A stretch of 64,000 nt of DNA from Euprymna scolopes. Lineage: Eukaryota. The stretch is from NCBI GenBank assembly GCA_053919585.1, contig CM132817.1; one strand, written 5' to 3'. A program made the translations under genes and the position numbers. Of the stretch, positions 1,151-55,718 are shown in pieces. The notes under the pieces are model-generated. The model worked only from the letters and a program-made list of their open reading frames with translations, was not told the origin of the DNA and searched no databases. How positions within the stretch are numbered: the stretch's first letter is position 1; each line of letters opens with the position of its first letter.

Positions 1151-3854
1151 TAGGTGTATCAGAATTTTGGGGGAATTTTTGACACCCCTAACAGAAAACT
1201 GCGAATAAAATATAGAAAACTCGTAATTTCTCTTTCTAAAGTAGGTTTTTTATTTTCTTTATAGAATATGCTTCCAAAATAAACTATTTAAGTTGTTTAA
1301 AAAATAATAGAAATATTATTTTTTATTTAAAAAAAAACAGTGTTTACACAGTGCGTGCGTGCGCTCAGGGAGCCATTTTGTTACCTAGTGAAATCAATTG
1401 ATTTTTATGAGATGAATATTTTTCAATTTTTAAACTTTAAACATCTATCAAAATTTTCCTATCCGTTCAATTGTTACGTTTTTTTTCAGGGTAAATGTAA
1501 AATTTTATGCTCTTTCCGATAAACTGAATATAATATTTTAGACAAACGTTGTTTTATAAATTCACCCCCCCATTTTGAAATGTCTATGAGAATTTTAATA
1601 ATTAATTTTGGTTGACACGTTTTATATATCACAAATTGAAGATAAAACATCAATAAATAAAATACTCAAATTTAAAACAACAAAAAAATATCACTTATCT
1701 GTAAATTTACCGGTAAATTCCAAAATGTAAATCCTTCTTTTTTCGATAACCACTTGTTTTTTTTTTTTGTTTTTTTTTACGTGGAAGCTTAATTTTTGTT
1801 TAGAATTTTCCAGTCAATATTTTTCGGTCAGTGTATATTTTTATATTTAATTCCTGGTTTCCTTTTTTTCGATATAAAAAAAGACGATACCATATAATGC
1901 AGATATATAGTATAATAAATAAAAAATTCAGGTATTTCTTTAAGATATTAAAAAAAAAAATTACATTTCATATCTTCGTCATTCCGTAACCCGTGTAAAT
2001 CCAAAAATAAAATATCCCAGTTTTCATGTACGATAGCGTAAAGGCGCCAACATTAAAAAAAAAGGACGATAAGTTATCTCCCTTTATTCATATAGGGTCA
2101 ATATGAAGCCACCCTCGAAAATTCCTTTAAAATTACGGCCAAATCTGTTCATTGCAATGTGGGCATAAAGTGGGTGCCCATTTGACGTCACATCATTATA
2201 GAAAAGTGACCCCCCACTTTGTGACCATTTGTAAAATTTTTATCTTGGAAACTACTAGTTTCGTTTGCCGTATATATAAATGGTTATTTCCGTTTTCAGC
2301 GCCCCCGAAAACCTTTAAAAGTGGAAAATTTGAAGGAATATAATCCTATATCGAGATTACTAACGTTTCTGAATTAGTGTTTTTTTACACTTATAGGCTT
2401 CCGTAGATAACAAAGTGATAATCTTAACATCCGGTTTCTTTACACTTTCTTGAAAGACACGCGTTGTCGCGATATGTGTTGGAAAAATCCTTCCATTTAA
2501 AAAATACATGGATTATAATATCAGACTTTTCTTGGATACCCGTTACTAAAAAGAACATTTCTGCTTTTCAAAAAGCACTCCCCGGATCCCCTTTCAAATT
2601 CTTCCAATTCGACCTCTCATCACGTATTCTATAGGTTATTCATCTCTTTCCCAATTTCTCCTTTTTTAATGCTTCAATACTTGTAACATTTTCTTTCTGT
2701 CATAGCGGAACCAAAATAAAAGTTTAAGGCGATTAACTCTGAACCATGTTGAATGTGGCTATCGTGAAGAAGTAATGCTTTACGTATATTTCATTCATAA
2801 TAGCTTTAAAATATACCAAGACATTCGGTAAGAAAATGCTAAAACATTAGATGTCATCTTATTGTAATGATATGCATAAGTCATTTTGATTACAATATCA
2901 AACTAACAACAACAATAGCAATTAAAATACATGAATTTCCACTTTCTATATGTAATCACCGATTCTCTAGTTAGATTAACTGTACTCTTTGATATCTGCG
3001 AAAATTACAGTCACTTTGGGGATGGTCATATAAAAAGTTAGAGCAGTGAGGTGAGAGCAAATGTAGTGCCAAATACTTATGACGCCGTTATCCATTGACA
3101 TGACTGCACACCGGAAGTAATATGACAACTGCCAAAGCATTGCCTTTCGTAGATTCTGTGCGCATGCGCATATATACGCACACATATTAGGTCGGGCATC
3201 ATGTAATGCTCAATATTTCTTTATTGTCGTAAAAATCGAGGCTCATAGTGAAATTGGATTCTCCGCGTAGTCATTAATCTCTTGAGGATGTTCTTTTGTG
3301 ATTATTTCTAAGAATTCGCGTAAAAATCCAAATGTTTCTATCTAAAATTTAGCTTTTCTTTCGGAGATTTCTTTCGACCACATTTTCAACGACTGTCATT
3401 AATCTGAAAAAGGTTTTATTAGGCTAACCCTTGCAACTACCAAATATTTCAATGCACGACTCTATTTTCTGAGTTAATTAACTTGCTAAAAAGTGTGCAA
3501 GAAACGTGTCTATTTAAATTAAGTTTATTGATCCATATTTTACGATAGTGACAAGCGAGAGATTTAATATATTTTCCATAAGCACGCATTAGCAAGTTCA
3601 TATGTATGTGTGTGTTCGTGTGGTATAAAATATGAAACATGGTTAAATATTATCTACTGTAATAATAGAGAAAAAAAGGATTAACACCTTTATGACATGT
3701 GTACTGTTTTGCAAATTAGGCACTCAATTTTCAGTAAAAAGAGATTTCATAGATGACAGAAAACATTGGAGTTGAGATTATTCATTATTCGTTACGTTTT
3801 TTTTAAAGAGAAGTTCCTAAGCTTTTGTTACAGAATTATAAAATATAGTCATTA

Positions 3855-14400: not shown

Positions 14401-17400
14401 GCAATGATTGAATATCTCGATATTGTAACCATATTGTTTCATCCAGCAAACAAAACTCTGTTGACATGCAATGTTTACTACATAGAATTGATTGAATATC
14501 TTCATATTGTAACCATATTGTACTGCAATAATTAATTCACAATTGATTTAATATCTTGATATTGTGATAATCCTTGGTCATCGAGCAAATAAACCTCTGT
14601 TTACATGCAATGCTTATTGCATAGTATTGATTGAATATCTGGATATTGTAGCCATATTGTTTTCTGTAGCAAATAAACCTCGGTTGCCATGCAATGCTTA
14701 CTGCATAGAATTGATTGAATATCCTCATATTGCAACCATATTATTTATCAAGAAATAAATCCCTGTTTACATGCAATGCTTATTGCATATAAGTGATTAA
14801 ATATCTTGATATTTAAACATATTGTTTTCTCGAGCAAATAAACCTATGTTGATATGCAATACTTACTGTATGGGAATGCTTTAATATCTTGATATTGTAG
14901 CCATATGGTTTTCTCAAGCAAATATACCTCTTTTGACATGCAATGCTTATTGCATTGAACTGGTTGTAATATCTTGACATTGAAACGATATTGCTTTCTC
15001 AAGTCAATTAACCTTTGTTAATATGCAAGTCTGACTGCATAGAATTGATTTAATATCTTTCTATTGTAACCATATTGTTTTCTGAAGCAAATAAACATCT
15101 TTTGACATGCAATGCTTACTGTATAGAATTGATTAGGTATCTTTATATTGAAACCATATTGTTTTCTCAAGCAAATAAACCTCTGTTGCCATGCAATTCT
15201 TACTGTATAGCACTGATTGAATATCTTAATATTGTAAGCATATCGCTTTGACAAGCAAGAAACCTCTGTGTATACTCTATGCTTTCTTAACAGAATTAAT
15301 TGAATATCTTGATATTGAAACCATATTGTTTTCTCTAGAAAATAGAATTTATTGAATACCTAGGTATTGTAACCATATTGTCTTCTCAAGCAACTAAACC
15401 TCGGTTTACATGCTATTCTTACTGCACAGAATTAATTGAATATATTGATATTGTAACCATTTTGTATTCTCCAGAATATATACCTCTGTTTACATGCAAT
15501 GCTTACTCCATAGAATTGATTGAATATCTTAATATGGTAATTATATTGTTTTCTGAAGTAATTAAACCTCTGTTTACATGCAATGCTTACTGCACAGAAT
15601 TGATTGAATATCTTGATATTGTGAGCATATGGTTTTCTCAAGCAAATAAACCTCCGTATACAGGCAATGTTTACTGCACAGAATTGATTGAATATCTTAA
15701 TATTGTAATCACATTGTTTTCTCAAGCAAATAAACCTCCGTATACAGGCAGTGTTTACTGCACAGACTTGATTGAATATCTTAATATTGTAAGCATATTG
15801 CATCCCAAGCAAATAAACCTTTGTATATATGCTATGCTTTCTGCACAGAACAAATGTAATATCTTTATATGTTTTACCATATTGTTTTTTCAAGCAAATG
15901 CACCTTTGTTAACATGCAATGCTTACTGCATAGAATAGATTGAATATCTTGATATTGTTACAATATTGTTTTCTCAACCAAAAAACCTCCGATGACATGC
16001 AATGCTAACTGCATAGAATTAATTGAATATCCTGATATTGTGGCCATATAGTTTTCTAAAGAAAACAAACCTCTGTTGACATCCAATGCTTATTGCATAG
16101 AATTGATTGAATATACTGATATTGAAACACTATTGTTTTCTGAAGCAAATAAACCTCTGCTGACATGCACTGCTTACTGCATAGAATTGACTTAATGTCT
16201 TGACATTTTAACCATGTTGTTTTCTCAAGAAAAGAAACCTCTGCTGACAGGCAATGCTTACTGCATAGAATTGATTTAATGTCTTTATATTGTAACCATA
16301 TTGTGTTTTCAAGCAAATAACCTCTGTTGATATGCAATACTTATAGCTTAGAATGGATTAAATATCTTTATATTGAAACTATATTGTTTTCTAATGATAC
16401 TTCTCTCTGTTGACACATTATGCTTATTGCAAGAATTGATTGATATCTTGATATTGTAACCATATTTTGTTCTTAAGCAAAAAAAACTCTGTTGACATGC
16501 AATGCTCATTGCATAGAATCAATCATTATCTTGATATTGTAGCCATATTCTTTTCTTAAGCAAATAAACCTCTGTTGACAGTTAATGCTTACTGCATAGA
16601 ACTGATGAAATATCTTGATATAGAAAGAATAGTGTTTTCCCTAGGAAATAAACCTCCATTTACATGCAATGCTAACTGCCTAGAAATGATTGAATATCTC
16701 GATAATGTAAAAAAAAAATTTTTCAAGCATATACCCCTCTGTTGACATGCAATGCTTATTGCACAGAATTTATTGAATATGTTGATATTAGAACCATATT
16801 GTTTTCCCAGGCCATTAAATGTCTTTTGACATGCAATAATTAATACATAGAATTTATTTAATATCTTGATATTGTAACCATATAATTTCTCCAGCAAATA
16901 TATCATTGTTGACATGCAATACTTACTGCATAGAATTGATTGAATATCTTGATATTGTAAATATATTGTTTTCTCAAGCAAAAAAAACCCTGTTGACATT
17001 CCATGTTTATTGCATAGGATCGATTGAATGTTTTGATGTTGAAACCATTTTGTTTTCTCAAGAAAATTAACCTCTGTTGATATGCACTGATTACCGCATA
17101 GAATTTATTTAATATCTTGATATTGTAAATATATTGTTCTCTAAAGAAAATATACCACTGTAGACATGCAATGCTTACTGCATAAAATTGATTAAATATC
17201 TTGATATTGGTACCGATATTGTTTTCTGCAGCAAAAAAAACTCTGTTGAGATGTAATCCTTATTGCACAGAATTGATTGAATATGAGGATATGTAAACTA
17301 TATTGTGTAAATAAAGCTTTTTACACATGGCATGAGTAATGCATAGAATTGATTGAATATCTTGATATTGAAACTATTGTGTTTTCTAAAGAAAATAAAC

Positions 17401-20400
17401 CTCTTTTGACATGCAATGCTTTCTGCATAGAATTGATTGAATATCGTTATATTAAAACCATATCTTTTGTTAAGCAAATAAACCTTTGTTGACATGCAAT
17501 GCTTACTGAATGGAATTAATTGATATTGTAACCATATTGTTTTCTCAAGAAAACAAACCTCTAGCGACATGCAATGCTTATTGCATAGAATTGATTAAAT
17601 ATACGGATATTTAAACAATATTGTTTTCTGAAGCAAATAAACCTCTGTTGACATGCAATGCTTACTGTATAGAATTAACTTAATGTCTTGATATTGTAAG
17701 CATATTGTTTTCCCAAGTAACTAAACCGCTGCTGACATGCAATGCTTACTGGATCGATTTGACTTAATGTGTTGATATTGTAACCCTATTGTTTTCTCAA
17801 GCAAGTAAACCTCTGTTGACATGTAATGCTTTTTGCAAAGAATTGATTGAATATCTTGTTATTGAAACCATATGTTTACATGCAATATAAAATAAACCTA
17901 TGTTGACATGCAATCCTTACTGTATATAATTGATTGAATATCTGTACATTTTAACTCTATAATTTTCTCAAGCATATAAACCTCTGTTAAAATTCAATGC
18001 ATAAAATTGATTGAATATCTTGATATTGTAACCACATTATTTTCTCAAGCAAATAAACCTCTTTTTACATGCTATGCTTATTGTATAGAATGGATTGAAT
18101 ATCTTGATAATGAAACCATATGTTGACATGCAATATAAAATAAACCTATGTTGACATGCAATCCTTACTGCATACAATTGACATAGAAACCATATTATTT
18201 AATAAACCTTTGTTTATGTGCACACCTTACTGCATAGAATTGATTGAATATCTTGATATTGTAACGATATTTTTTTCTCAATTTTTTATTGCATAGAATT
18301 GATCGAATATACTGATATTGAAACAATATTGTTTTCTCAAGCAAATAAACCACTGTTGACACGTACTGCTTACTGCATAAAATTCATTGAATATCTTGAT
18401 ATTGTAACCATGTTGTTTTCTCAAGCAAATAAACCTGTGCTGACATGCAATGCTTACTGCATAAACTTGATTGAATATATTGATATTGTAACCATATTGT
18501 TTTCTCAAGCAAATAACCTCTGTTTTCATGCAATGCTTATTGCATAGAATTGATTGAATATCTTGGCATTGAAACCATATTGTTTTTTAACGAATATAAC
18601 CTCTGTTTACATGCTATGCTTACTGCACAGAATTAATAAAATATCTTGATATTGTCACCATATGATTTTCTCCAGCAAATATACCTCTGTTGACATGCAA
18701 GGCTTACTGCAAACATTGATTGAATATCTTGATATTGTAACCATATTGTTTTCTCAAGAAAACAATCATCTGTTGACATGCAATGCTTATTGCACACAAT
18801 TGATTGAATATCCTTATTTTGTAAACATACTGTTTTCTCGACAAAATATACCTCTCTTAAAATGCAATGCTTACTGCATATAATTGATGTAGTATCTTTA
18901 TATTGACACCATATTGTTCTCTCAAGCAAATAAGTCTCTGTTGTCATGCAATGCTTACTGCATAGAATTGATTGAATATCTTGATATTGTAACAATATTG
19001 TTGTCTAAAGCAAACAAACCTCTGTTGATATTCAATGCTTATAGCATAGTATTGATTTAATATCTTGACATTCTAAACATATTTTTCCCAGCAAATAAAC
19101 CTCTGTTGACATGCAATGGTTACAACATATTATTAATTGAATCTCGTGATATTTTAAACATATTTTTTGTCATGAAAATAAACATCTGTTTACATGCAAT
19201 GCATATTGCATAGAATTTATTGAATACTTTTGTATTATAACAATAATGTTTACTCAAGCTAATAAACCTCTATTGACATGCAATGCTTACTGCGCAGAAG
19301 TGATTGATTATATACATATTAAACCATATTGTTTTCTCAAGCAAAAAAAAAACCTCTGTTGATATGCAATGCTTACTGAATAGAATTGAGATAATATCTT
19401 TATATTTTAACCATATTGTTTTCTCCAGCAAATAAACCTCTGTTTACATGCAATGCTTACTGGAAAGAATAGATTGAATTTCTAAATATTGGATCCATAT
19501 TTATTTGTAAAGCAAATAAACCTCTCTGGACTGAATATTCTAATATTGAAACTATATTGTTTTCTCAAGGACATAAACCTCTGTTTACATGCAATGCTTT
19601 CTACATAGAATTCATTGAATATCTTGATATGGTAAGGGTATTGTTTTCCCAAGCAAATAAACCTCTGTCGACATGCAATGCTTACTGCATAGAATTGATT
19701 GAATTTCATGATACTCTAACCATATTGTTTTCTCCAGGAAATAAACCTCAGTTGACATGCAAAACTTATTGCATAGAATTAATTGAATATGTTGATATTG
19801 TGACCACATGGTTTCTCAAGCATATAAACCTCTGTTGACATGCAATGCTTATTACATAGAATTAATCAATTTTGTAGCTATATTGTTTTCTCAAGAAAAC
19901 AAACCTCCAGTGACATGCAATGCTTACTGCATAGAATTGATAGTGTTACAATATTATTTTCTCAAGCAAATAACCTGTGTTGACATGCAATGCAAATTAC
20001 ATCGAATTGATGGAATATCTCTATATTGTTTCCTCCGGCCAAAAAAATCTCTATTTACATGCAATGCTTACTGCATAGAATTGAGTCAATATCTTGATAT
20101 TGTAACCATATTGTTTTATCAAGCAAATAAACCTCTGCTGTCATGCAATGCTTACTGCATAGAATTGATTGAATATATTTATATTGTAACCATATTTTGT
20201 CTCCGCAAATAAACCTCCGTTGACATGTAATGCTTACTGCATAGAATTGATTCAATATCTTTATATAGTAACCAGATTATTTTCTAAAGCAATCAAAAAT
20301 TTGTTGACATGCAATGCTTACTGAGCAGACTTGATTGAATACTTGATATTGAAACCATATTGTTTTCTAAAGCAAATAAATCTTTGTTTTCATGCAATGC

Positions 20401-20927
20401 TTACTGCATACAATTGATTGAATATCTTGATATTGAAACCAAATTGTTTTCACCAGCTAGTAAACCTCTGTTGACATGCAATTCTTACTGCATACAATTG
20501 ATTGAATATTTGAAGAGTGTACCATATTGTGTTCCCCAGCAAATACACCTATGTTGATATGCAATGCTGACTGAATAGAATTGACTGAATATCTTGATAT
20601 TGTAACCATATTTTTTCTCTAGCAAATAAACCTCTGTTGACATGCAATGCTTACTGCATAGAATTGATTTAGTATCTTGATATTGTAACCAAATTCTTTT
20701 ATCAAGGAAATAGACCTCTGTTTACATGCAATGCTAATTGCATAGAATTGATTTAATATCTTGATTTTGTAACCACATTGTTTTCACCGCCAAATAAACC
20801 TTCGTTGACATGCAATGCTTACTGCATAGAATTGATTCGATATCTTGATATTGTAACTATATTGTTTTCTCCAGCAAATAATCTCTGTTGACATGCAATG
20901 CTTACTGCATTGAATTTATTGTGTATC
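11401..20927. repeat. 84-bp tandem satellite, block 2
   Basis: Same 84-bp consensus; units are diverged and contain kb-scale internal duplications. Confidence 0.96.
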
Positions 20928-21288
20928 TGTAAAGTCGAACAGAATTAAGGAAGAAAGCGACCACGTGTCTGCGTGTGTTGTCTTCCATGCTTGGAGGATC
21001 ACAGGGAGGGCAGTAATTAAAAATGGCGACTTTAGTTTTTGTAAGATTATCGAGCGATGACGTCACCCCTCACGTGACTGTTTTTCTTGTCGCCAATTGG
21101 CTGATGACGAACTCTTTGACAATAAAAGGAGTATGTTCAGAAGATCGAGGACAGTGTGTATCAACTGCATCAGTGTGATTAGAAGGTCGACGTGTGTGTT
21201 AATCAACTGCCGTAGTTGTGAAACGAATTCCAGCTTTAGAAGTTCGACGTGTGTGTTAATCAACTGCCATAGTTGCGAAACGAATTCA
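20928..21288 (+). repeat. 5' LTR (304 bp plus 57-bp tandem duplication of its 3' end)
   Basis: Aligns with 25093-25396. Contains AATAAAAGG near 21121. Segment 21179-21235 is repeated at 21236-21292. Confidence 0.92.
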
Positions 21289-21300
21289 AGCTATTTCGGC
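21289..21300 (+). promoter_or_regulatory. non-canonical primer-binding site complementary to the 5' end (nt 1-12) of tRNA-Phe
   Basis: AGCTATTTCGGC directly follows the LTR terminal CA. Its reverse complement GCCGAAATAGCT is the start of metazoan tRNA-Phe(GAA). The same 12-mer sits at the same position in the second Gypsy (45039-45050). Confidence 0.8.
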
Positions 21301-21303
21301 GAA

Positions 21304-22046
21304 ATGGGGGAAAAATCGACCTCAAATTAATACCAGAGTTTGATGGATCCACCCCGGTACTTGACTGGGTGGAAAAGGTGGAATTACATTGCCTTTTGTC
21401 TGGCGTAAAAAACTTCGAACATGTTGTTCCTCTGCGTTTGTCCGGCGGCGCCTTTGCGGTGTATCAATAGCTCAGCCATGAAGGCAAACAGGGCTACGAG
21501 AAAATCAAGGCGGGTCTGTTCAAGGCGTTTGCGATTGACCCCACCACTGCTTGGGAGCAACTTGAGGCAAGGACCTTATGTCCAGGCGAAACAGTCGACA
21601 TGTACTTGGCAGAGCTGACGAAGTTGACAGTGTTGTTTGGTGGACTGCCTTAGCGGACCTTGGCATGCAAATTCCTAGCAGGACTCCCAGCAGGAGCAAA
21701 GCAACTACTACGAGCTAGTTCAAGTGCAGATTCGTTGCCCCTTAATGACATAGTAGATCGGGCCAGGACTCTAATGATGAATTACTCCGAGATGAGGGGA
21801 CCAGTAATTGCTGCTGCTCAGTCCACACCGAATGATAAGAAACTGTATCAGGGACCCGGTCCACGTGGTGGAATCATATGCTACAGATGCAATGGACAGG
21901 GCCACATTGCAAGGAACTGCCGGCAACAACCAACGGCTGTTCGCTGCTACCGGTGTAAGGAAACTGGCCATATAGCTCAAGAGTGTCCGGAAAACGGAAC
22001 CGGGGACAAGGCGTCAGCGCCGACCTCTTCCCCACGCAGAAATTAA
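21304..22046 (+). pseudogene. gag: Gypsy gag (early frameshift and two in-frame stops) with two CCHC zinc knuckles
   Basis: IDLKLIPEFDG...WVEKVEL N-terminus; knuckles [14 protein letters not shown] and [14 protein letters not shown]; stops at 21468 and 21651. Confidence 0.9.
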
Positions 22047-25000: not shown

Positions 25001-25180
25001 AAAGAAGTCCAGCTAATCCCCCTCCGTAGGAATGCTCGTAACAAACGACCGCGGCCGCAATGCCGCATGTGTGATCTTGAGACCAGAGGGGGTGTAAAGA
25101 CGAACAGAATGAAGGAAAAAGTGACCACGTGTCTGCGCGTGTTGTCTTACCTGCTGGGAGGATCACAGGGAGGGCAGTAA
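21989..25180 (+). pseudogene. pol: Gypsy pol (protease, RT, RNase H, integrase) with five in-frame stops
   Basis: ORF pieces 21983, 22526, 22784, 23066, 23708 and 24968 are all in one frame, -1 relative to gag. Motifs: ALLDYGC and LLGYD (protease); RPVMDYRELN, LGFGLNVAP, YLDN (RT); VDAS and IRTDS (RNase H); HHDSGHPG, GMDI, ILTDND, GNGIAER (integrase). Confidence 0.93.
25085..25092 (+). promoter_or_regulatory. polypurine tract
   Basis: AGAGGGGG immediately before the TGT of the 3' LTR. Confidence 0.85.
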
Positions 25181-25396
25181 TTAAAAATGGCTGCTGTGGG
25201 TTTTTTTAAGATCATGGAGCCCTGACGTCATCCCTCATGTGACTGTTTTTCTGGCCGCCGATTGGCTGATGACGAACGCTTGGAAAATAAAAGGAGTATG
25301 TTTAGAAGATCGAGGACAGTGTGTATCAACTGCATCAGTATGGTTAGAAGGTCGACGTGTGTGTTAATCAACTGCCGTAGTTGTGAAACGAATTCA
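25093..25396 (+). repeat. 3' LTR (304 bp)
   Basis: TGTAAAGACG...GAATTCA; homologous to the 5' LTR, roughly 10% divergent by eye. Confidence 0.93.
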
Positions 25397-28000
25397 ATAT
25401 CTTGATATTGTAATCATATTTTTTCTCAAGAAAATAAACCTCTGTTGATATGCAATGCTTATTGCATAGAATTGATTGAGTATCTTGATATTGTAGCCAT
25501 ATTGTTTTCTCTAGCAAATAAACCTCTGTTGACATGCAATGCTTACTGCATACAATTGATTTAATATCTTTATATTGTAACCATATTGCTTTCTCCAGGA
25601 AATAAACCTCTGCTGACATTCGATGCTTATTGCATAGAATTGAGTGAATGTCTTGATATTGTAATCATAGTGTTTTCTCCAGTAAATAAACATCTATTGA
25701 CATGCAATGCTTACTGCATAGAATTGATTGAATATCTTGATATTGTAATCATAGTGTTTTCTCCAGCAAATAAACCTCTATTGACATGCAATGCTTATTG
25801 CGTAGAATTGATATAATATCGAGATATGGTAAGCATATTTTTCCCAATCAAATAAACCGCTGTTGACATGCACTGCTTATTGCACAGAATTAATTGAATA
25901 TCTTTATATTGTAACCATATTGTTTCTCCAGGAAATAAACCTCCGTTCACATGCAATGCTTATTGCATAGAATTGATTCAATATCTTGATATTGTAAGAC
26001 TATTGTTTTTTCAAGCAAATTAACCTCTGTTTACATGCAATTCTTACTGCATAGAATTGATTGAATGTCTTGATATTGTAACCATATTGTTTTCTCCAGC
26101 AAATAAACCTCCGTTTACATGCAGTTCTTATTGCGTAGAATTGATTGAATATCTTGAAATTGTAACTATATAATTTTCCCCGCCAAAGAAAGCTCTGTTG
26201 ACATGCAATACTTACTGAATAGAATTGATTAAATATCTTGATATTGTAACCATATTGTGTTGTCCAGCAAATAAACCTATGCTGACGTACAATGCTTATT
26301 CATACAATTGATTGAAAATCTTGATATTGTCACCATATTGTTTTCTCAGGCTAATTAATCTCTGTTAACATAGAATGCTTATTGCACAGAATTGATTGAA
26401 TATCTTGATATTGTAACCATACTGTTTTCTCAAACAAATAAACCTATGTTGACATAGAATGCTTACCGCATAGAATAGATTGAATATCTTGTTATTGTAA
26501 GCGTATTGTTTTCTACGGCAAATAAACCTGTGTTAATATGCAATGCTTACTGTATATATTTGATTGAATATCTTTATATTTTAACCTTATTTTTTTCTCA
26601 AGCAGATAAACCGCAGCTGACATGCAAGTCTGACTGCATAGAATTGATTGAATATCTTGATATCGTAACCATATTGTTTTCTCAAGCAAATAAACCTCTG
26701 TATACAGGCAATGATTACTGCATAGAATTGATTGAATATCTTGATACTGTAACTATATTGTTTTCTCAAGCAAACAAACCTCAGTTGAAATGACAATGCT
26801 TGCTGCATAGAATTGATTGTATGTCTTGATATTGTAACCATATTCTTTCTCTAGCAAACAAACCTCAGTTGAAATGCAATGTTTATTGCATAGAATTGAT
26901 TGAATATATTTATCTGGTAACAATATTGTTTTCTCCAGCAAAGAAACCGCTGTTGACATGCAATACTTATTGCATAGAATTGATTGAATGTCTTAATCTT
27001 GTAACCATATTGTTTTCTCAGGCAAATAAACTCCGTTGACATGCAATTCTTACTGCATAGAATTGATTAAATATATTGTAACCACATTGCTTTCTCCAGG
27101 AAATAAACCTCTATGGATGTGCAATGCTTATTGGATAGAATTGATTGAATATCTTGATATTGTAAGAATATTGTTTTCTCCAGCAAATAAACCTCTATTG
27201 ACATGCAATGCGAATCGCATAGAATTGATGTAATATCTTGATATGGTTACAATATTGTTTTCTCCAGCAAATAAACCTCTATTGACATGCAATGCGAATC
27301 GCATAGAATTGATGTAATATCTTGATATGGTTACAATATTGTTTTCTCCAGCAAATAAACCTCTATTGACATGCAATGCGAATCGCATAGAATTGATGTA
27401 ATATCTTGATATGGTTTCAATATTGTTTTCTCCAGCAAATAAACCTCTATTGACATGCAATGCGAATCGCATAGAATTGATGTAATATCTTGATATGGTT
27501 TCAATATTGTTTTCTCCAGCAAATAAACCTCTATTGACATGCAATGCGAATCGCATAGAATTGATGTAATATCTTGATATGGTTTCAATATTGTTTTCTC
27601 CAGTAAATTGACATGCAATGCTTATTGCATAGAGTTGATTGAATATCATGATATGTTAACCATCTTGTTTTCTCCAGCAAATAAACCTCTATTGACATGC
27701 AATGATTACTGCATAGAATTGATTGAATATCTTGATATTGTTACCATATTGGTTTCTCCAGGAAATAAACCTCTATTGACATGCAATGCTTACTGCATAG
27801 AATTGATTGAATATCTTAATATTGTAACCATATTGGTTTCTCCAGCAAATAAACCTCTATTGACATGCAATGCTTACTGCATAGAAATTATTGAATATCT
27901 TTATATTGTAACCATATTGTTTTCTCCAGAAAATAAACCTCTTTTGACATACAATGGGTACTCTATAGAGTGAATTGAATATGTTGGTATTGTTACCATA
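25397..28000. repeat. 84-bp tandem satellite, block 3
   Basis: Same consensus; includes five near-identical variant units at about 27180-27600. Confidence 0.96.
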
Positions 28001-31385: not shown

Positions 31386-31481
31386 TTTATGTAAATATTA
31401 CGCAAATATAAATCATGTAGAATATATGCATAAATATAATTATTTCCAGCGCCAGACAACGTCGCAACTCCCAACAACAAA

Positions 31482-31527
31482 CTGGAAGACTCAAGTTTCA
31501 CCCTCATTTGGGGCTCATCAATTAGAC
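31482..31527 (-). ncRNA. minimal type I hammerhead ribozyme (copy 1, C3U, 3' strand of stem I damaged)
   Basis: GTCTAA-TTGATGA-GCCC(caaatga)GGGT-GAAAC-TTGA-GTC-TT. Confidence 0.65.
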
Positions 31528-31867
31528 ACATCCGAACTCGAGATTTGAAATCCAAGCCACTTGCATGCGAGGTGAGCACTTTATCAACTGAGCAAACACG
31601 CCACATACATAATAACGCCTATCCACTGACAGAGATCACGCAAACCGAAGCGAAATCCGACAATGGATTGAACTTATCTCATACCAGAACAACGGACGTA
31701 GTCATCGCAACAAGCTATAACCCAACCCGATGTTTCACAAGTCGGAATTTTATACACGTAGCGAGCAATCAACAATAGAACCTGTAGAATGTAAGAGAAT
31801 ATATACTTATTTCCACAGCTAGACAACGTCGCAGCTCACCAGAGCCCTGAGAGTCAACAAACCGGCA

Positions 31868-31914
31868 GTCTAAGATTTGAGTTTCTGCCTTCATTTTAGG
31901 CTCATCAGTTATAC
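31868..31914 (-). ncRNA. minimal type I hammerhead ribozyme (copy 2)
   Basis: GTATAA-CTGATGA-GCCT(aaaatga)AGGC-A-GAAAC-TCAA-ATC-TTAGAC; stem I pairs 5/6. Confidence 0.7.
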
Positions 31915-32618
31915 ACAGCCGATCTCGAGATTTAAAACCCCAAGCTTCTTGCATGAACTGAGCAAATACGCCACACACAACGTGGTTAATAGTAAAAGAA
32001 TATACCTAGAGGAAATCGGATGTCAATTTAAAGACATGTTCCGAAACTGTAGCAATATTTTACGTTGAACCTGAAGGAAAATCGATTAGGAATGGTAAAA
32101 ATAATAAAACTTAGGATATGTTAGGAATAAATGTGAAAAATAAGAAGAGAAACACAACAGCTTTAGAGGTAAAAATGAAATTGAATATGAATTAAAATGA
32201 GCAATCATAGGTAAAGCTAGTAAATATAAACCAGATAAACTTGAAAGATGTAATTTATACACTTTATGTACACTTGAATCATACCACATAGTGAGATCTA
32301 AAGAAGGAATTTTAAATAAAAGTTAGAAGTGATACAAAGCTGTCTTCATATTAATAAATGTTTATTATCATGCCTAAGCTTTGAGTAATAAATAAAACAA
32401 AGTAAATATTATATAATAGGGAAAGTTAAATATAAATTAGTAGCTACTTAAGAAAGTATGTTCAAGGAATCATTAGGTCGTTAATCTAGGAAGTAGAAAG
32501 TCTATTAACAATACTTTAAGTGTGAGAAGTAACATTAAACATAAATTTTATAATTGATATTGGTAATTAATTAATACCATAATCGTTTCAATAAGTAGTA
32601 ATAATTGATAAAAAAAAT

Positions 32619-44869: not shown

Positions 44870-47400
44870 TGTTCTTTCTCTGCTACCGGCGCGAATAAAC
44901 CAGGAATAAGAAGTGAGAGGTGTTAACCTACGTGATGCGACAAGAGTTACTGAACATTAATAGGGCAAACTTCTTAGATAAAAGAGTATTTGCTCATGCT
45001 TGATAAGTAGGCTATACTATTTCAAACTCTACACAACAAGCTATTTCGGCTGACTAATAACCAAAACTAAATAACAGACAGAGCATTTGATACCCGAATT
45101 TATGGCATCTCCCTTGATCACAGTGTCTCAATGGTTGGAACAGGTTGAGATGGTGTTCAAAATCTATGGTGCTGACAACCTCGAGCGTGTTTTATTACTT
45201 TGGCTCTGTCAGTAAACCGATAGTTAACCCGTGACCAAAAGACTATCTAAAGCTGGTGAAACAAGTTCTCATCGTGGTTTAGCACTTCTGTTGCATTTGA
45301 AAAGCTTATCTCTCGTCGTTTGCGCTCGAGGAAAATTGTGGACAAATACTTCGGTGACCTATGGGACCTGGCACTTCTAATTAAAGAAACCTCCCTCTGA
45401 TCGAGCGTTCAATTGCGCTTTTAATTCAGCGCTCTTCGCTTCGGTTACACAACAAATGCGTAGGTCATCAAGGGTAGAACACATGACACTGGAACAGATT
45501 CTTGCTAGGAATCGAGCTTTCATGACAGAAGTAGAAGTGAGTCAGCCTGTTGCTGCAGCAGCCGGGCGACGCAAAGTTATTCTTCGTGAGCCTGTCAACC
45601 CACTTTCAACATCGGACCAGCAAGATGCAGTCGCAGTGCAGTACCAAAAATGTGCAAATCCCAATCAGTTTGTAAAAGATTGTCGGCAGTTCGCTGGCAA
45701 AGCATGAAGGGATGCACTATTATTAGTGCCAGCAATAAGGACATGTCGCATCAAGGTGTTTGGGAAACGAGACAAAGACGAGAGATCCGTACTACACTAT
45801 CGCCACATAGACTAGATCGGATAGCGTAGGTGGATTCTGGCCGCTTCTCATTTGTTATCATTGGGTTGTTATGTCAATTCAAAATAGGAAAAGTATCGCA
45901 GTTTTTAGCCAAGTTGTTGGTAGCATAACTTTAAAAGCTACCAAAAGGAACCCCCTGAAAACTGACGTACTGATGGTAAACAGTAAGTCAGTTGAAGTTA
46001 ACCTTCTTCTGAGAATGTACGTCACCAAATTTGGCGGCGTGCATATTGACGAAAGAGGCAAAGTACATTTAGCTGAAGCTGTTCTTGTTCTGAACGCAAA
46101 AAAAGAGTTGGAACAGTCTGTATTCCGCGTAGAGTTCGATCAACGCACCAAATAATGGACGGTGTCGTGATCAGCTGCCAGAAAATGTATGCAACAAATA
46201 TAACATCCCTGCAAAAGCTCGTGCTATATATGATTAAGATCTACAAGTTTAGATTGATAATTACTCAGAAACAGAATTGGAGTCCTAAAAGCGTATGATC
46301 CGACTAATGGCAGTCATACAGCAGAAAAGCAAAAAGTGAAGTCGGTTCTAGACTATCAGAAATTAAATGAGCACCTATACCAATTCACTGCCCATGCGGA
46401 TATATGCATCGAAAAGCTAAAAGAATGGCAGCGATCAGGATCCAATATATCGGTGTTAAAACTTCGCAAGGCATAACTTCAAATACACGTGCACCAATAA
46501 CTGTAGCTCTATCAAACTATCAATCAAGGGTCGAAGTCATTGTCTTAACCGCATAGAGTTCAGACTCCGTGTGGTAGTGTCTATCATGTAAACAATTGTT
46601 GACGCTATTTTGATGAAATACAAGAGCATACATCTGGCTATATTGATGCCGTATATGTGGACGAGAGTACTGTTCCCATAGGAAATTACGGCCTCCTTAG
46701 TAAAAAGAGGCTACAGAATGGTAAAAGAGTGCTGGGTTTGCAGGTTTTGAGAGAGTGTAACGGTCTGTATTGGAGGAGTTGGAATGAAATCCCAGATATG
46801 CCGCGTGTCGTCACTTGGCGGAATATATTTTTGTCATTTGGAAAGTCGGTTGGGTATCTTCCCGTGAGTAGTTTGCTTTGGGCTGCCGTTGCGTTCATCA
46901 AGCGGAGAGCATTTGACGTCATCACTGGATGGGATGAAAATGTAAACGACGCTCTCTCAAAGTTATGACAAAGGAGGTTCTCACCAAAGTGCACAAAGAA
47001 GACACAATGCGGGAAAATGATGTCGATGCTCAAGACGTTAGCGTATAGGTTGACGCAAGATCTCTCGCTATCGGTATGTCATTGGTATATTATGGAGCTG
47101 TGTCAGACGATGCTTGTTGGTCACGCCCAACAAAAGATTCCCAACATATAAAATTTGCGGAACTCGATGCCGTATTAAAATAATAAACTTGGCAAGACGA
47201 CCACCTTGCATTTGTTCACTAATTCTGCCTGTGTTCGAAAATGGATGTTGAATAATCTTACTGACAGGAATACGCACTATCAATTGATGAATCCTAGGTA
47301 AAATCTAGCCAAACGGAGGTGAATCAATTGACGAGTATGTCTTGATGCAAATAAGAGCACTACTGAGTTGCAACTTATCTGCACTGCATCTGTGAACTCA
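44870..47400 (+). mobile_element. heavily decayed Ty3/Gypsy element of the same lineage as 20928-25396 (LTR end, gag, PR, RT, RNase H remnants; boundaries approximate)
   Basis: LIPEF and QWLEQVEMV gag remnants near 45085-45155; GGGAAAC at 45762; LMAVIQQK, VLDYQKLNE and FTAHADICIEKLKEW (RT); RVLGLQV and GWDE; same post-LTR 12-mer as the first element. Confidence 0.85.
45039..45050 (+). promoter_or_regulatory. non-canonical PBS complementary to tRNA-Phe 5' end (second instance)
   Basis: ACAACA|AGCTATTTCGGC, just upstream of the gag remnant. Confidence 0.75.
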
Positions 47401-50267: not shown

Positions 50268-51066
50268 TATTTAAATAGAATATGCGGAAATTTCTCGAGA
50301 GCTCTTTCGGCTATCATCTTGTCCGGAAAAAATAGATAGCATACAAAATTAGCAAAATTAAAGACCACTATGGGGGAATTTTGATGTGCCAAAAATAAGA
50401 TTAAAAAAACGATTAAAAGAAAGACTTAATCTGAACATAAGGCGTTTACAGGCGACTAAAACTTGGCAAGACGAGGGGGGAAAAACAAAGCAGAAAAGAG
50501 TCAACGTTCCCCAAAGAGAAATAATGCCTTTGTTGTCTCCCTTTGCCGGCATAAAGAAGGTTTTCGAACCGCAATAGAGACAGACCCCAATGGTTTTTGG
50601 AGGCTGCTCTGTATAGCACCTCGAACCACTCTATTTTATATTTATCAGCACAGCATGGATTTTCAACCAAATGCTGGCCAATAGCAGAGAAAAAGGCTAC
50701 GAGAAGGAGGGAGACTATCGGATCCTACCCTTCCCTGTCTGATTTTAGATGGAACATGCTGGTTTATACGAGTTAGCAAATGCAAATGCCCGACATAACC
50801 AGCATCGCACTGGCATTTAAATTGATAAACAATATTACTAATTTGGGTGTAAGGCAAACTATCTTTCAGTCGCTTTTAAACCCCTTATTTTCAAATTAAA
50901 TCTTTCTTTTAATCGTTTTTTTTTCTCTTATATTTGGCACATCAAAATTCCCTCATAGTGCTCTTTAATTTCGCCAATAATATTGTTTTGTATGCTATCG
51001 ATATTTCCTGACGCGTTTATAGCCGAAAGAGCTGTCGAGAAATTTCCGCACATTTTATTTAAATCT
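50268..51066 (-). mobile_element. 5'-truncated Penelope-like element: GIY-YIG endonuclease remnant between ~195-bp inverted pseudo-LTRs
   Basis: Minus strand SNIVYQFKCQCDAGYVG..RINQHVP and SAIGQHLVENPCCA..FEVL (frameshifted). Arms 50268-50462 and 50864-51066 are inverted copies, each with a decayed hammerhead (GCCGAAAG-AGCT-CTC/GTC). Confidence 0.85.
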
Positions 51067-55647: not shown

Positions 55648-55718
55648 TCTGTAAAGTCTGACGAAGTTACTGGATATTTGATACGATTCAGTAACCGAAA
55701 CATGTGTAACTAAACAGA
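55648..55718 (+). ncRNA. type I hammerhead ribozyme with intact core
   Basis: TCTGT-AA-AGT-CTGACGA-A-GTTACTGGAT(10-nt loop)ATTCAGTAAC-C-GAAAC-ATGT-GT-A-ACT-AA-ACAGA; GUA site at 55706-55708. Confidence 0.8.

What the first reader, a model, noticed from the sequence alone, without database searches (positions are those of the whole stretch)
21289..21300. Gypsy lineage apparently primed by a 12-nt 5' fragment of tRNA-Phe
Seen: directly after the 5' LTR's terminal CA there is no TGG-starting PBS, only AGCTATTTCGGC. The identical 12-mer follows ...ACAACA in a second, much more decayed and divergent Gypsy at 45039-45050. Established: metazoan tRNA-Phe(GAA) begins GCCGAAATAGCTCAG, so the motif is its exact reverse complement for nt 1-12. 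A normal Phe PBS would pair with the 3' CCA end (TGGTGCCGAAA...), and copia/Ty5 use an anticodon-cleaved half tRNA-iMet, which is different. Inference: the geometry is right for priming, because tRNA nt 12 pairs with the base adjacent to U5. The primer would be a very short 5' tRNA fragment cut in the D arm, perhaps by the element's own RT/RNase H after annealing. I cannot check whether this has been reported.
Basis: partly seen in the sequence, partly recalled or inferred. Interest (0 to 1): 0.9.

Follow-up and report, generated by a model that had tools for sequence, protein, structure and literature searches.

The report
Retroelement primer site matching tRNA-Phe 5' end
A very abundant group of retrovirus-like mobile elements in this mollusc genome, and its relatives in barnacles, decapods and whipworms, carries a 12-base primer site right after the left repeat that pairs with the first 12 bases of a host tRNA rather than its 3' end, which points to a way of starting reverse transcription that I could not find described.

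Summary
AGCTATTTCGGC lies directly after the terminal CA of the 5' LTR at 21289-21300, and again at 45039-45050 in a second, truncated element whose pol is only 33-47% identical to that of another family carrying the site. It is the exact complement of bases 1-12 of the host tRNA-Phe(GAA), which has about 780 gene copies.

With the CA in front, the motif occurs 5,481 times in the 5.9 Gb genome, against 1 for the control. Its flanks belong to at least 12 unrelated families and diverge immediately on both sides. Five-base target duplications fix the LTR end, so the site abuts U5. Some copies have 100% identical LTRs and open gag and pol frames, and the family is present in poly(A) RNA-seq contigs.

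- **Rejected:** no LTR contains a complement of the site, so Tf1-type self-priming is out. No TGG-type site is present.
- **Other hosts:** relatives found by protein, not by motif, have a 12-mer in the same register. It is the same in a barnacle, differs at bases 7-9 in two decapods and in whipworm, and one crab lineage matches tRNA-Lys3 bases 1-12.

Who makes the cut after base 12 is untested. The scan noted this before elsewhere in this genome (s1-244830). I found no publication.

The parts
20923..20927 (+). 5' copy of the target-site duplication (GTATC) in the 84-bp satellite
   Evidence: the satellite unit is interrupted here and resumes with ATATC at 25397
20928..21288 (+). 5' LTR of element 1 (TG...CA, 361 bp, with a 57-bp internal tandem duplication absent from the 3' LTR)
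   Evidence: 89-92% identical to 25093-25396
21289..21300 (+). Primer binding site AGCTATTTCGGC, complement of host tRNA-Phe(GAA) bases 1-12
21304..22025 (+). gag (LIPEFDG N-terminus, two CCHC knuckles), interrupted by stops and frameshifts
   Evidence: 67% identical to the open gag of L040
22130..24658 (+). pol (protease, RT, DUF7047, RNase H, integrase), broken into several ORFs
   Evidence: 73% identical to the 849-aa open pol frame of L040
25080..25092 (+). Polypurine tract (agaccagaggggg) abutting the 3' LTR
   Evidence: the same ..caggggggag position in other copies
25093..25396 (+). 3' LTR of element 1
25397..25401 (+). 3' copy of the target-site duplication (ATATC)
45039..45050 (+). 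Identical primer binding site of element 2, after ...ACAACA
45087..45206 (+). gag N-terminal remnant of element 2
   Evidence: 44% identity over 41 aa to L040 gag
45916..47180 (+). Protease-RT remnant of element 2; the rest of pol and a 3' LTR were not found
   Evidence: 33-47% identity to L040 pol residues 29-477

Best explanation
The 12-mer is the minus-strand primer binding site of a large clade of retrovirus-like LTR elements. The clade is marked by a gag that begins ..LIPEFDG.. and by the Pfam domain DUF7047 between RT and RNase H.

Proposed steps:
- The first 12 bases of host tRNA-Phe pair with the site. These are the 5' strand of the acceptor stem, bases 8-9, and three bases of the D stem. 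Annealing is probably helped by the two-knuckle nucleocapsid.
- A 3'-OH is made after U12, inside the D stem, and RT extends it into U5.
- Later, plus-strand strong-stop synthesis copies the 12 RNA bases and runs off the physical 5' end of the tRNA fragment. This explains why the site is exactly 12 bases long and why each cycle resets it to the host tRNA sequence.

Shown here: position, invariance, exact complementarity, host-specific variants, recent activity, and the absence of the alternative sites. Inferred: that the primer is a tRNA fragment. My preferred source of the cut is the element's own RNase H acting at the edge of the 12-bp duplex, as Tf1 does on its own RNA (about 0.4). The alternative is a host-made 5' fragment.
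For: - **Geometry.** Five copies have clean 5-bp target duplications (CCTTA, CCTTC, TTGCA, TAATT, GAAAT). These fix the LTR as TG...CA with the 12-mer starting at the next base.
- **Abundance.** CA plus the 12-mer occurs 5,481 times, against 1 for the control. When the three bases in front of the 11-mer are left free, CAA is the dominant context.
- **Invariance.** Thirty loci show at least 12 unrelated flank types, and sequence diverges immediately after ...GGC, which is tRNA base 1. These families share only 33-73% pol and 27-68% gag identity.
- **Host tRNA.** The 73-nt tRNA-Phe(GAA) gene starts GCCGAAATAGCT|CAGT and has about 780 copies.
- **Recent activity.** LTR pairs are 100% identical in L040 and L046, and L040 has open gag and pol frames. 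Poly(A)/oligo-dT RNA-seq contigs from 2 studies span U5, the site, gag and pol with the site unchanged.
- **Loci retrieved by protein, not by motif.** All have a 12-mer directly after the LTR's CA:
  - Amphibalanus, two lineages: AGCTATTTCGGC.
  - Petrolisthes and Macrobrachium: AGCTATCTAGGC.
  - Trichuris suis, two families: AGCTATCGAGGC.
  - A second Petrolisthes lineage: AGCTATCCGGGC, the complement of GCCCGGATAGCT, which is the 5' end of tRNA-Lys3 (sequence in PMC8715211).
  - One ENA assembly: AGCTATTTCGGC.
- **Matching tRNA variants exist.** tRNA-Phe(GAA) genes starting GCCTAGATAGCT and GCCTCGATAGCT, with a compensating 3' acceptor strand, occur in environmental eukaryotic DNA; 77 of 78 are called Phe by ARAGORN.
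- **Host specificity.** In this genome the foreign variants are at background level: 3 and 8 hits against controls of 2 and 10. No tRNA gene here has those starts.
Against: - No primer molecule has been observed. A 12-nt RNA is below the size range of normal small-RNA libraries.
- The tRNA-Phe and tRNA-Lys genes of the barnacle, decapods and whipworm were not read from their own genomes. Co-variation with the host therefore rests on environmental tRNA genes and on my recollection of nematode and arthropod tRNAs.
- The within-genome sample was selected by the motif itself. Only one unselected copy was available (L045 second copy, one point change).
- One relative (L182) has GGCTATTCCGGC, which I could not assign to a tRNA.
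- Pairing needs the acceptor stem and part of the D stem to be melted, and a cut at an unusual place.
Confidence: 0.75

Rival explanations
1. The site is a real primer binding site, but the primer is another small host RNA whose 3' end happens to read ...GCCGAAAUAGCU. Examples would be a processed fragment of a tRNA-Phe-derived repeat or an abortive Pol III transcript, rather than mature tRNA-Phe cut after annealing.
For: Nothing here identifies the molecule. The genome holds hundreds of tandem tRNA-Phe gene copies that could yield odd transcripts.
Against: The same register is found with three tRNA-Phe 5' variants and with the tRNA-Lys3 5' end in other hosts. Complementarity always ends at tRNA base 1. 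This fits mature tRNA 5' ends better than lineage-specific side products.
Confidence: 0.12
2. The 12-mer is a conserved cis element with another role, such as packaging, dimerisation or an integrase or nucleocapsid contact. On this reading the tRNA match is incidental and priming occurs elsewhere or in another way.
For: Function was not tested. In element 1 the site overlaps a near-palindrome (ATTTCGGCGAAAT).
Against: The palindrome is absent from the other families. No TGG-type site follows the LTR, and three families have no TGG within 30 bases. A non-tRNA signal would have no reason to change at bases 7-9 into other tRNA 5' ends in other hosts, or to end exactly at tRNA base 1.
Confidence: 0.08
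3. Tf1/sushi-type self-priming: the 5' end of the element's own transcript folds back onto the site and is cut to give the primer.
For: The site length (12 against 11 bases) and its position directly after U5 resemble Tf1.
Against: In nine LTRs of eight families, the best match to the complement of the site has 3-5 mismatches out of 12, which is what shuffled LTRs give. A self-primed site would co-vary with each family's R region rather than being identical across families.
Confidence: 0.02

Closest known systems
copia (Drosophila), Ty5 (yeast) and fungal Copia elements primed by a 5' tRNA half cut in the anticodon stem-loop
   Same: The primer is a 5' fragment of a host tRNA rather than its CCA end. 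The site lies directly after U5 and has no TGG (Kojima 2024, PMC10886601, cites Kikuchi 1986 and Ke 1999).
   Different: In those elements the site pairs with the anticodon stem-loop region of a roughly 39-nt half tRNA, mostly tRNA-iMet. Here it pairs with bases 1-12 of tRNA-Phe (tRNA-Lys3 in one lineage), the cut would lie in the D stem, and the primer would be only 12 nt. The elements are not Copia: integrase follows RNase H.
Tf1/sushi self-priming retrotransposons
   Same: A very short (11-12 nt) 5'-terminal RNA piece paired to a site abutting U5. A cut at the edge of the duplex would create the 3'-OH, and plus-strand synthesis would run off the primer's 5' end.
   Different: The paired RNA is not the element's own 5' end. 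It matches a host tRNA and is identical across unrelated families.
Canonical retroviral and Ty3/Gypsy priming by the 3' 18 bases of a tRNA
   Same: A host tRNA is the source of the primer. The LTR-site-gag-pol-polypurine tract-LTR layout, TG...CA ends and 5-bp target duplication are the same.
   Different: The opposite end of the tRNA is used. The site is 12 bases rather than about 18 and has no TGG.

Membership tests
LTR retrotransposon or retrovirus-like element (order Ortervirales, Gypsy-type gene order) | Two LTRs with TG...CA ends, a short target-site duplication, and a polypurine tract before the 3' LTR | tested here: met
   LTR pairs of 294-563 bp, 5-bp duplications..caggggggag tract
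LTR retrotransposon or retrovirus-like element (order Ortervirales, Gypsy-type gene order) | gag with CCHC knuckles, and pol in the order protease-RT-RNase H-integrase | tested here: met
   zf-CCHC x2; RVP, RVT_1, DUF7047, RNase H (RVT_3/PF00075), Integrase_H2C2, rve, in that order
Ty3/Gypsy (Metaviridae) in the strict sense | RT and RNase H of the Ty3/Gypsy type (Pfam RT_RNaseH / RT_RNaseH_2), with RT falling inside the Gypsy clade | tested here: inconclusive
   Those Pfam models do not hit at E<0.01. The nearest solved sequences are retroviral integrases and foamy-virus PR-RT, with no Ty3 hit. The nearest Atlas clusters are DUF7047 clusters, followed by retroviral ones. No reference RT tree could be built.
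Canonical tRNA 3'-end priming | Site starts TGG and complements the 3' CCA end of a tRNA | tested here: not met
   no TGG within 13 bases of any LTR; the best match to the tRNA-Phe 3'-end site has 3-5 mismatches out of 12
copia/Ty5 half-tRNA priming | Site complements the anticodon stem-loop region of a tRNA (usually iMet) | tested here: not met
   the site complements bases 1-12 (acceptor 5' strand plus the start of the D stem) of tRNA-Phe
Tf1/sushi self-priming | Site complements the first ~11 bases of the element's own transcript (start of R) | tested here: not met
   no complement in nine LTRs beyond the level seen in shuffled LTRs
Odin retrotransposons (Wang and Han 2022) | Sea-anemone elements with a dual RNase H, sister to lokiretroviruses | not tested
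   PMC9040795 reports them only from Actiniaria and says nothing about a primer site. No sequences were available to compare.

The most novel reading that the evidence does not exclude
A cross-phylum lineage of retrovirus-like elements (molluscs, barnacles, decapods, trichinellid nematodes) starts reverse transcription from the 5'-terminal 12 bases of a host tRNA, cut inside the D stem after the shared ..AUAGCU. The tRNA is Phe, or Lys(UUU) in one crab lineage. This would be a third way of using a tRNA as primer, beside the 3' end and the anticodon-cut half. Mechanistically it would link tRNA priming to Tf1-type 5'-end priming.
Probability: 0.65. Interest if true: 0.85.

Novelty: new variant of a known kind. 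Interest (0 to 1): 0.8.

Why it matters
Primer choice is a defining step of retroelement replication, and textbooks list three modes: the tRNA 3' end, the anticodon-cut half tRNA, and self-priming. A fourth mode has several consequences.

- **Annotation.** These elements are probably scored as 'no PBS' by LTR annotation tools that only test tRNA 3' ends. At least 5,000-13,000 copies in this genome alone may be affected.
- **Enzymology.** It predicts an RNase H or host nuclease activity that cuts a tRNA after base 12.
- **Host defence.** 3' tRNA fragments, which target classical primer sites, would not target these sites. 5' tRNA fragments would instead resemble the primer.
- **Evolution.** Because the site tracks the host's acceptor-stem sequence, it gives a built-in marker of which host an element last replicated in. 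That is useful for testing horizontal transfer between phyla.

Tried and rejected
- **Self-priming.** Searched nine LTRs for a complement of the site; matches were at chance level.
- **Canonical site.** Looked for TGG or a tRNA-Phe 3'-end complement in the 100 bases after the LTR; none found.
- **Odin retrotransposons as the clade.** The paper restricts them to sea anemones and does not mention priming.
- **Cer1 of C. elegans as a precedent.** It uses an ordinary tRNA-Pro 3'-end site.
- **Literature searches.** The exact 12-mer and its variants appear only as tRNA probes or unrelated primers. Concept searches returned nothing on 5'-terminal tRNA priming.
- **Host tRNAs near relatives.** ARAGORN on the foreign loci found no tRNA genes.
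- It has no match in this genome, so this host's Lys tRNA starts differently. This fits the absence of Lys-type sites here, and it also shows that recalled tRNA sequences are not safe evidence.
- **Unbiased sampling by DUF7047.** The search gave 13,356 first-look candidates, of which 150 were scored.
- **RNA-seq contigs.** They cannot show transcript starts. All begin at the same assembly-graph breakpoint.
- **L180 (Petrolisthes P0081).** It lacks gag and LTRs and gave no site.
- **Tree artefacts.** Two long ORFs in L042 and L043 that entered the tree are unrelated sequences on very long branches and should be ignored.

Full report
**1. Observation**

The 12-mer AGCTATTTCGGC is at 21289-21300 and at 45039-45050 on the + strand. 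With up to one mismatch there are four matches, against 0.21 expected by chance. The two 1-mismatch hits (50300, 51022) are the arms of an unrelated inverted repeat.

Element 1 is an old, degraded copy.
- Its LTRs are 20928-21288 and 25093-25396, and they are 89-92% identical.
- A polypurine tract at 25080-25092 abuts the 3' LTR.
- The element interrupts an 84-bp satellite, with a GTATC/ATATC target duplication.
- The LTR therefore ends with the CA at 21287-21288, and the 12-mer begins at the next base.
- gag (CCHC knuckles) and pol (protease, RT, DUF7047, RNase H, integrase) follow, broken by stops and frameshifts.

Element 2 has the same 12-mer after ...ACAACA. It keeps only a gag N-terminus (45087-45206) and a protease-RT remnant (45916-47180). 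That remnant is 33-47% identical to the pol of another family carrying the site.

**2. The host tRNA**

The window's genome is 5.9 Gb, and RNA runs that hold the element are labelled mollusc. It contains about 780 matches to the tRNA-Phe 5' 25-mer, and ARAGORN calls the sampled ones tRNA-Phe(GAA). The 73-nt gene starts GCCGAAATAGCT|CAGT.

The site is the exact complement of bases 1-12. Base 13 (C) would face the A of the LTR's CA, so pairing cannot extend further.

**3. It is a conserved junction element, not chance**

- CA plus the 12-mer occurs 5,481 times in the genome, against 1 for the reversed control.
- When the bases in front of the 11-mer are left free, CAA is by far the commonest context. 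One family has an LTR ending in TA.
- In 30 loci, the sequence upstream (LTR end) and downstream (leader, then a gag ATG within about 15-60 bases) falls into at least 12 unrelated types. It diverges immediately after ...GGC, which is where the tRNA's first base pairs.
- Nine longer copies gave LTR pairs. Five have clean 5-bp target duplications (CCTTA, CCTTC, TTGCA, TAATT, GAAAT). These prove that the LTR ends in CA and the site abuts it. All have a ..caggggggag tract before the 3' LTR.
- These families share only 33-73% pol and 27-68% gag identity with one another's representative.
- Internally deleted derivatives keep the LTR and the site (L047, L049).
- A second copy in L045 that was not selected by the motif has the site in the same place with one point change.
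- The clade's marker domain DUF7047 gave 13,356 first-look candidates in the genome, of which 150 were scored.

**4. Recent activity and expression**

Two copies have 100% identical LTRs (427 and 383 bp). One has uninterrupted gag and 849-aa pol frames. Contigs from oligo-dT and poly(A) RNA-seq runs of two studies span U5, the site, gag and pol of that family, with no change in the site. Contigs cannot show transcript ends.

**5. Alternatives tested**

- **Self-priming.** The best match to the complement of the site in nine LTRs has 3-5 mismatches of 12, as in shuffled LTRs.
- **Canonical priming.** No TGG occurs within 13 bases of any LTR, and three families have none within 30. The best match to the tRNA-Phe 3'-end site has 3-5 mismatches of 12.

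**6. Relatives in other animals (retrieved by protein, so not biased by the motif)**

The open pol frame finds relatives with 48-57% identity in Trichuris, Trichinella, Macrobrachium, Petrolisthes and Amphibalanus. It also finds many unnamed assemblies.

Wherever an LTR pair could be defined, a 12-mer lies directly after the LTR's CA:

| Host | Locus | 12-mer after CA |
|---|---|---|
| Amphibalanus, two lineages | L054, L179 | AGCTATTTCGGC |
| Unnamed ENA assembly | L181 | AGCTATTTCGGC |
| Petrolisthes | L053 | AGCTATCTAGGC |
| Macrobrachium | L056 | AGCTATCTAGGC |
| Trichuris suis, two families | L052, L057 | AGCTATCGAGGC |
| Second Petrolisthes lineage | L178 | AGCTATCCGGGC |
| Another ENA assembly | L182 | GGCTATTCCGGC (unassigned) |

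- The differences sit at bases 7-9, which face acceptor-stem bases 4-6.
- tRNA-Phe(GAA) genes that start GCCTAGATAGCT and GCCTCGATAGCT, with the compensating 3' strand, exist in environmental eukaryotic DNA. Of 78 such genes, 77 are called Phe.
- The complement of the L178 site, GCCCGGATAGCT, is the 5' end of tRNA-Lys3(UUU), as printed for the human tRNA in PMC8715211.
- In a pol tree, the L178 lineage groups with a barnacle element, while the other Petrolisthes lineage groups with Macrobrachium and is sister to the nematode clade. Site type therefore does not simply follow element phylogeny.
- In the window's genome the foreign variants are at control level (3 and 8 hits). No tRNA gene has those starts.

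I could not read the tRNA genes of the foreign hosts themselves. That is the main gap.

**7. Mechanism**

Shown: a 12-base site abutting U5. It is the exact complement of the host tRNA's 5' terminus, is bounded on one side by the LTR and on the other by tRNA base 1, is held invariant across deeply diverged families, changes with the host, and is present in recently active copies.

Inferred:
- tRNA bases 1-12 anneal, which needs the acceptor stem and part of the D stem to be opened.
- A 3'-OH is made after U12, and RT extends it.
- Plus-strand strong-stop synthesis later copies the 12 RNA bases and runs off the fragment's 5' end. This sets the site length and rewrites the site to the host sequence at every cycle.
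- tRNA-Phe and tRNA-Lys3 share bases 7-15 (AUAGCU|CAG), which suggests that the cut is defined by the duplex edge or by this context.

I favour a cut by the element's own RNase H at the duplex edge, by analogy with Tf1 (from established knowledge; about 0.4). A host-made fragment is the alternative. Known 5' tRNA fragments are longer (14 nt or more; my knowledge).

**8. Comparison with known systems**

The closest known systems are the copia/Ty5 half-tRNA primers and Tf1 self-priming. This differs from the first in the tRNA region and cut site, and from the second in the source of the RNA. A 2024 survey by a Repbase curator lists only 3'-end and anticodon-loop tRNA primers (PMC10886601).

'Gypsy' is only loosely right. 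The gene order fits, but the Ty3/Gypsy RNase H models do not hit, and the nearest solved sequences are retroviral.

**9. Novelty**

I found no description in the searchable literature. Subscription-only papers are not covered, so an older report cannot be excluded.

The scan itself noted the same site on other DNA of this genome (s1-244830, s1-275093). I re-tested that note's claim about barnacles, decapods and whipworms and confirmed it. I add the host-specific variants, the tRNA-Lys3-type lineage, and the negative controls in this genome.

Noticed in passing
window 15000-20927 and 25397-27300: Long array of an 84-bp satellite (units 60-86% alike) into which element 1 inserted. The array continues on both sides of the element.
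   Followed up: partly
window 50270-50330 and 51000-51050: Inverted repeat (...ggaaatttctcgagagctctttcggctat / atagccgaaagagctgtcgagaaatttcc) about 700 bp apart, possibly the ends of a small DNA transposon. It caused the two 1-mismatch hits to the 12-mer and is unrelated to the primer site.
   Followed up: partly
G000 contigs C18 (about 100.09-105.52 Mb) and C28 (about 101.7 Mb): tRNA-Phe(GAA) genes lie in very large tandem arrays. On C28 the spacing is a regular 219 bp over tens of copies. About 780 matches in all.
   Followed up: no
L040 4896-4898: RNA-seq contigs of four runs carry 32 extra bases here, near the end of pol, relative to this genomic copy. The expressed copies therefore differ from it by an indel.
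   Followed up: no
L047 and L049: Internally deleted derivatives with intact LTR pairs (97-99.7% identical). The primer site is followed directly by pol residue ~215 or ~577, so gag and part of pol are missing.
   Followed up: partly
L182 (ENA ERZ26052449) 3003-3014: A relative with GGCTATTCCGGC after the LTR's CA. Its complement GCCGGAATAGCC was not assigned to any tRNA, and the host organism is unknown.
   Followed up: no
window 31416-31975 and 55648-55718: Earlier first-reader notes on this window (s1-259203, s1-259291) report a tRNA-headed hammerhead element and a type I hammerhead ribozyme. I did not examine them.
   Followed up: no
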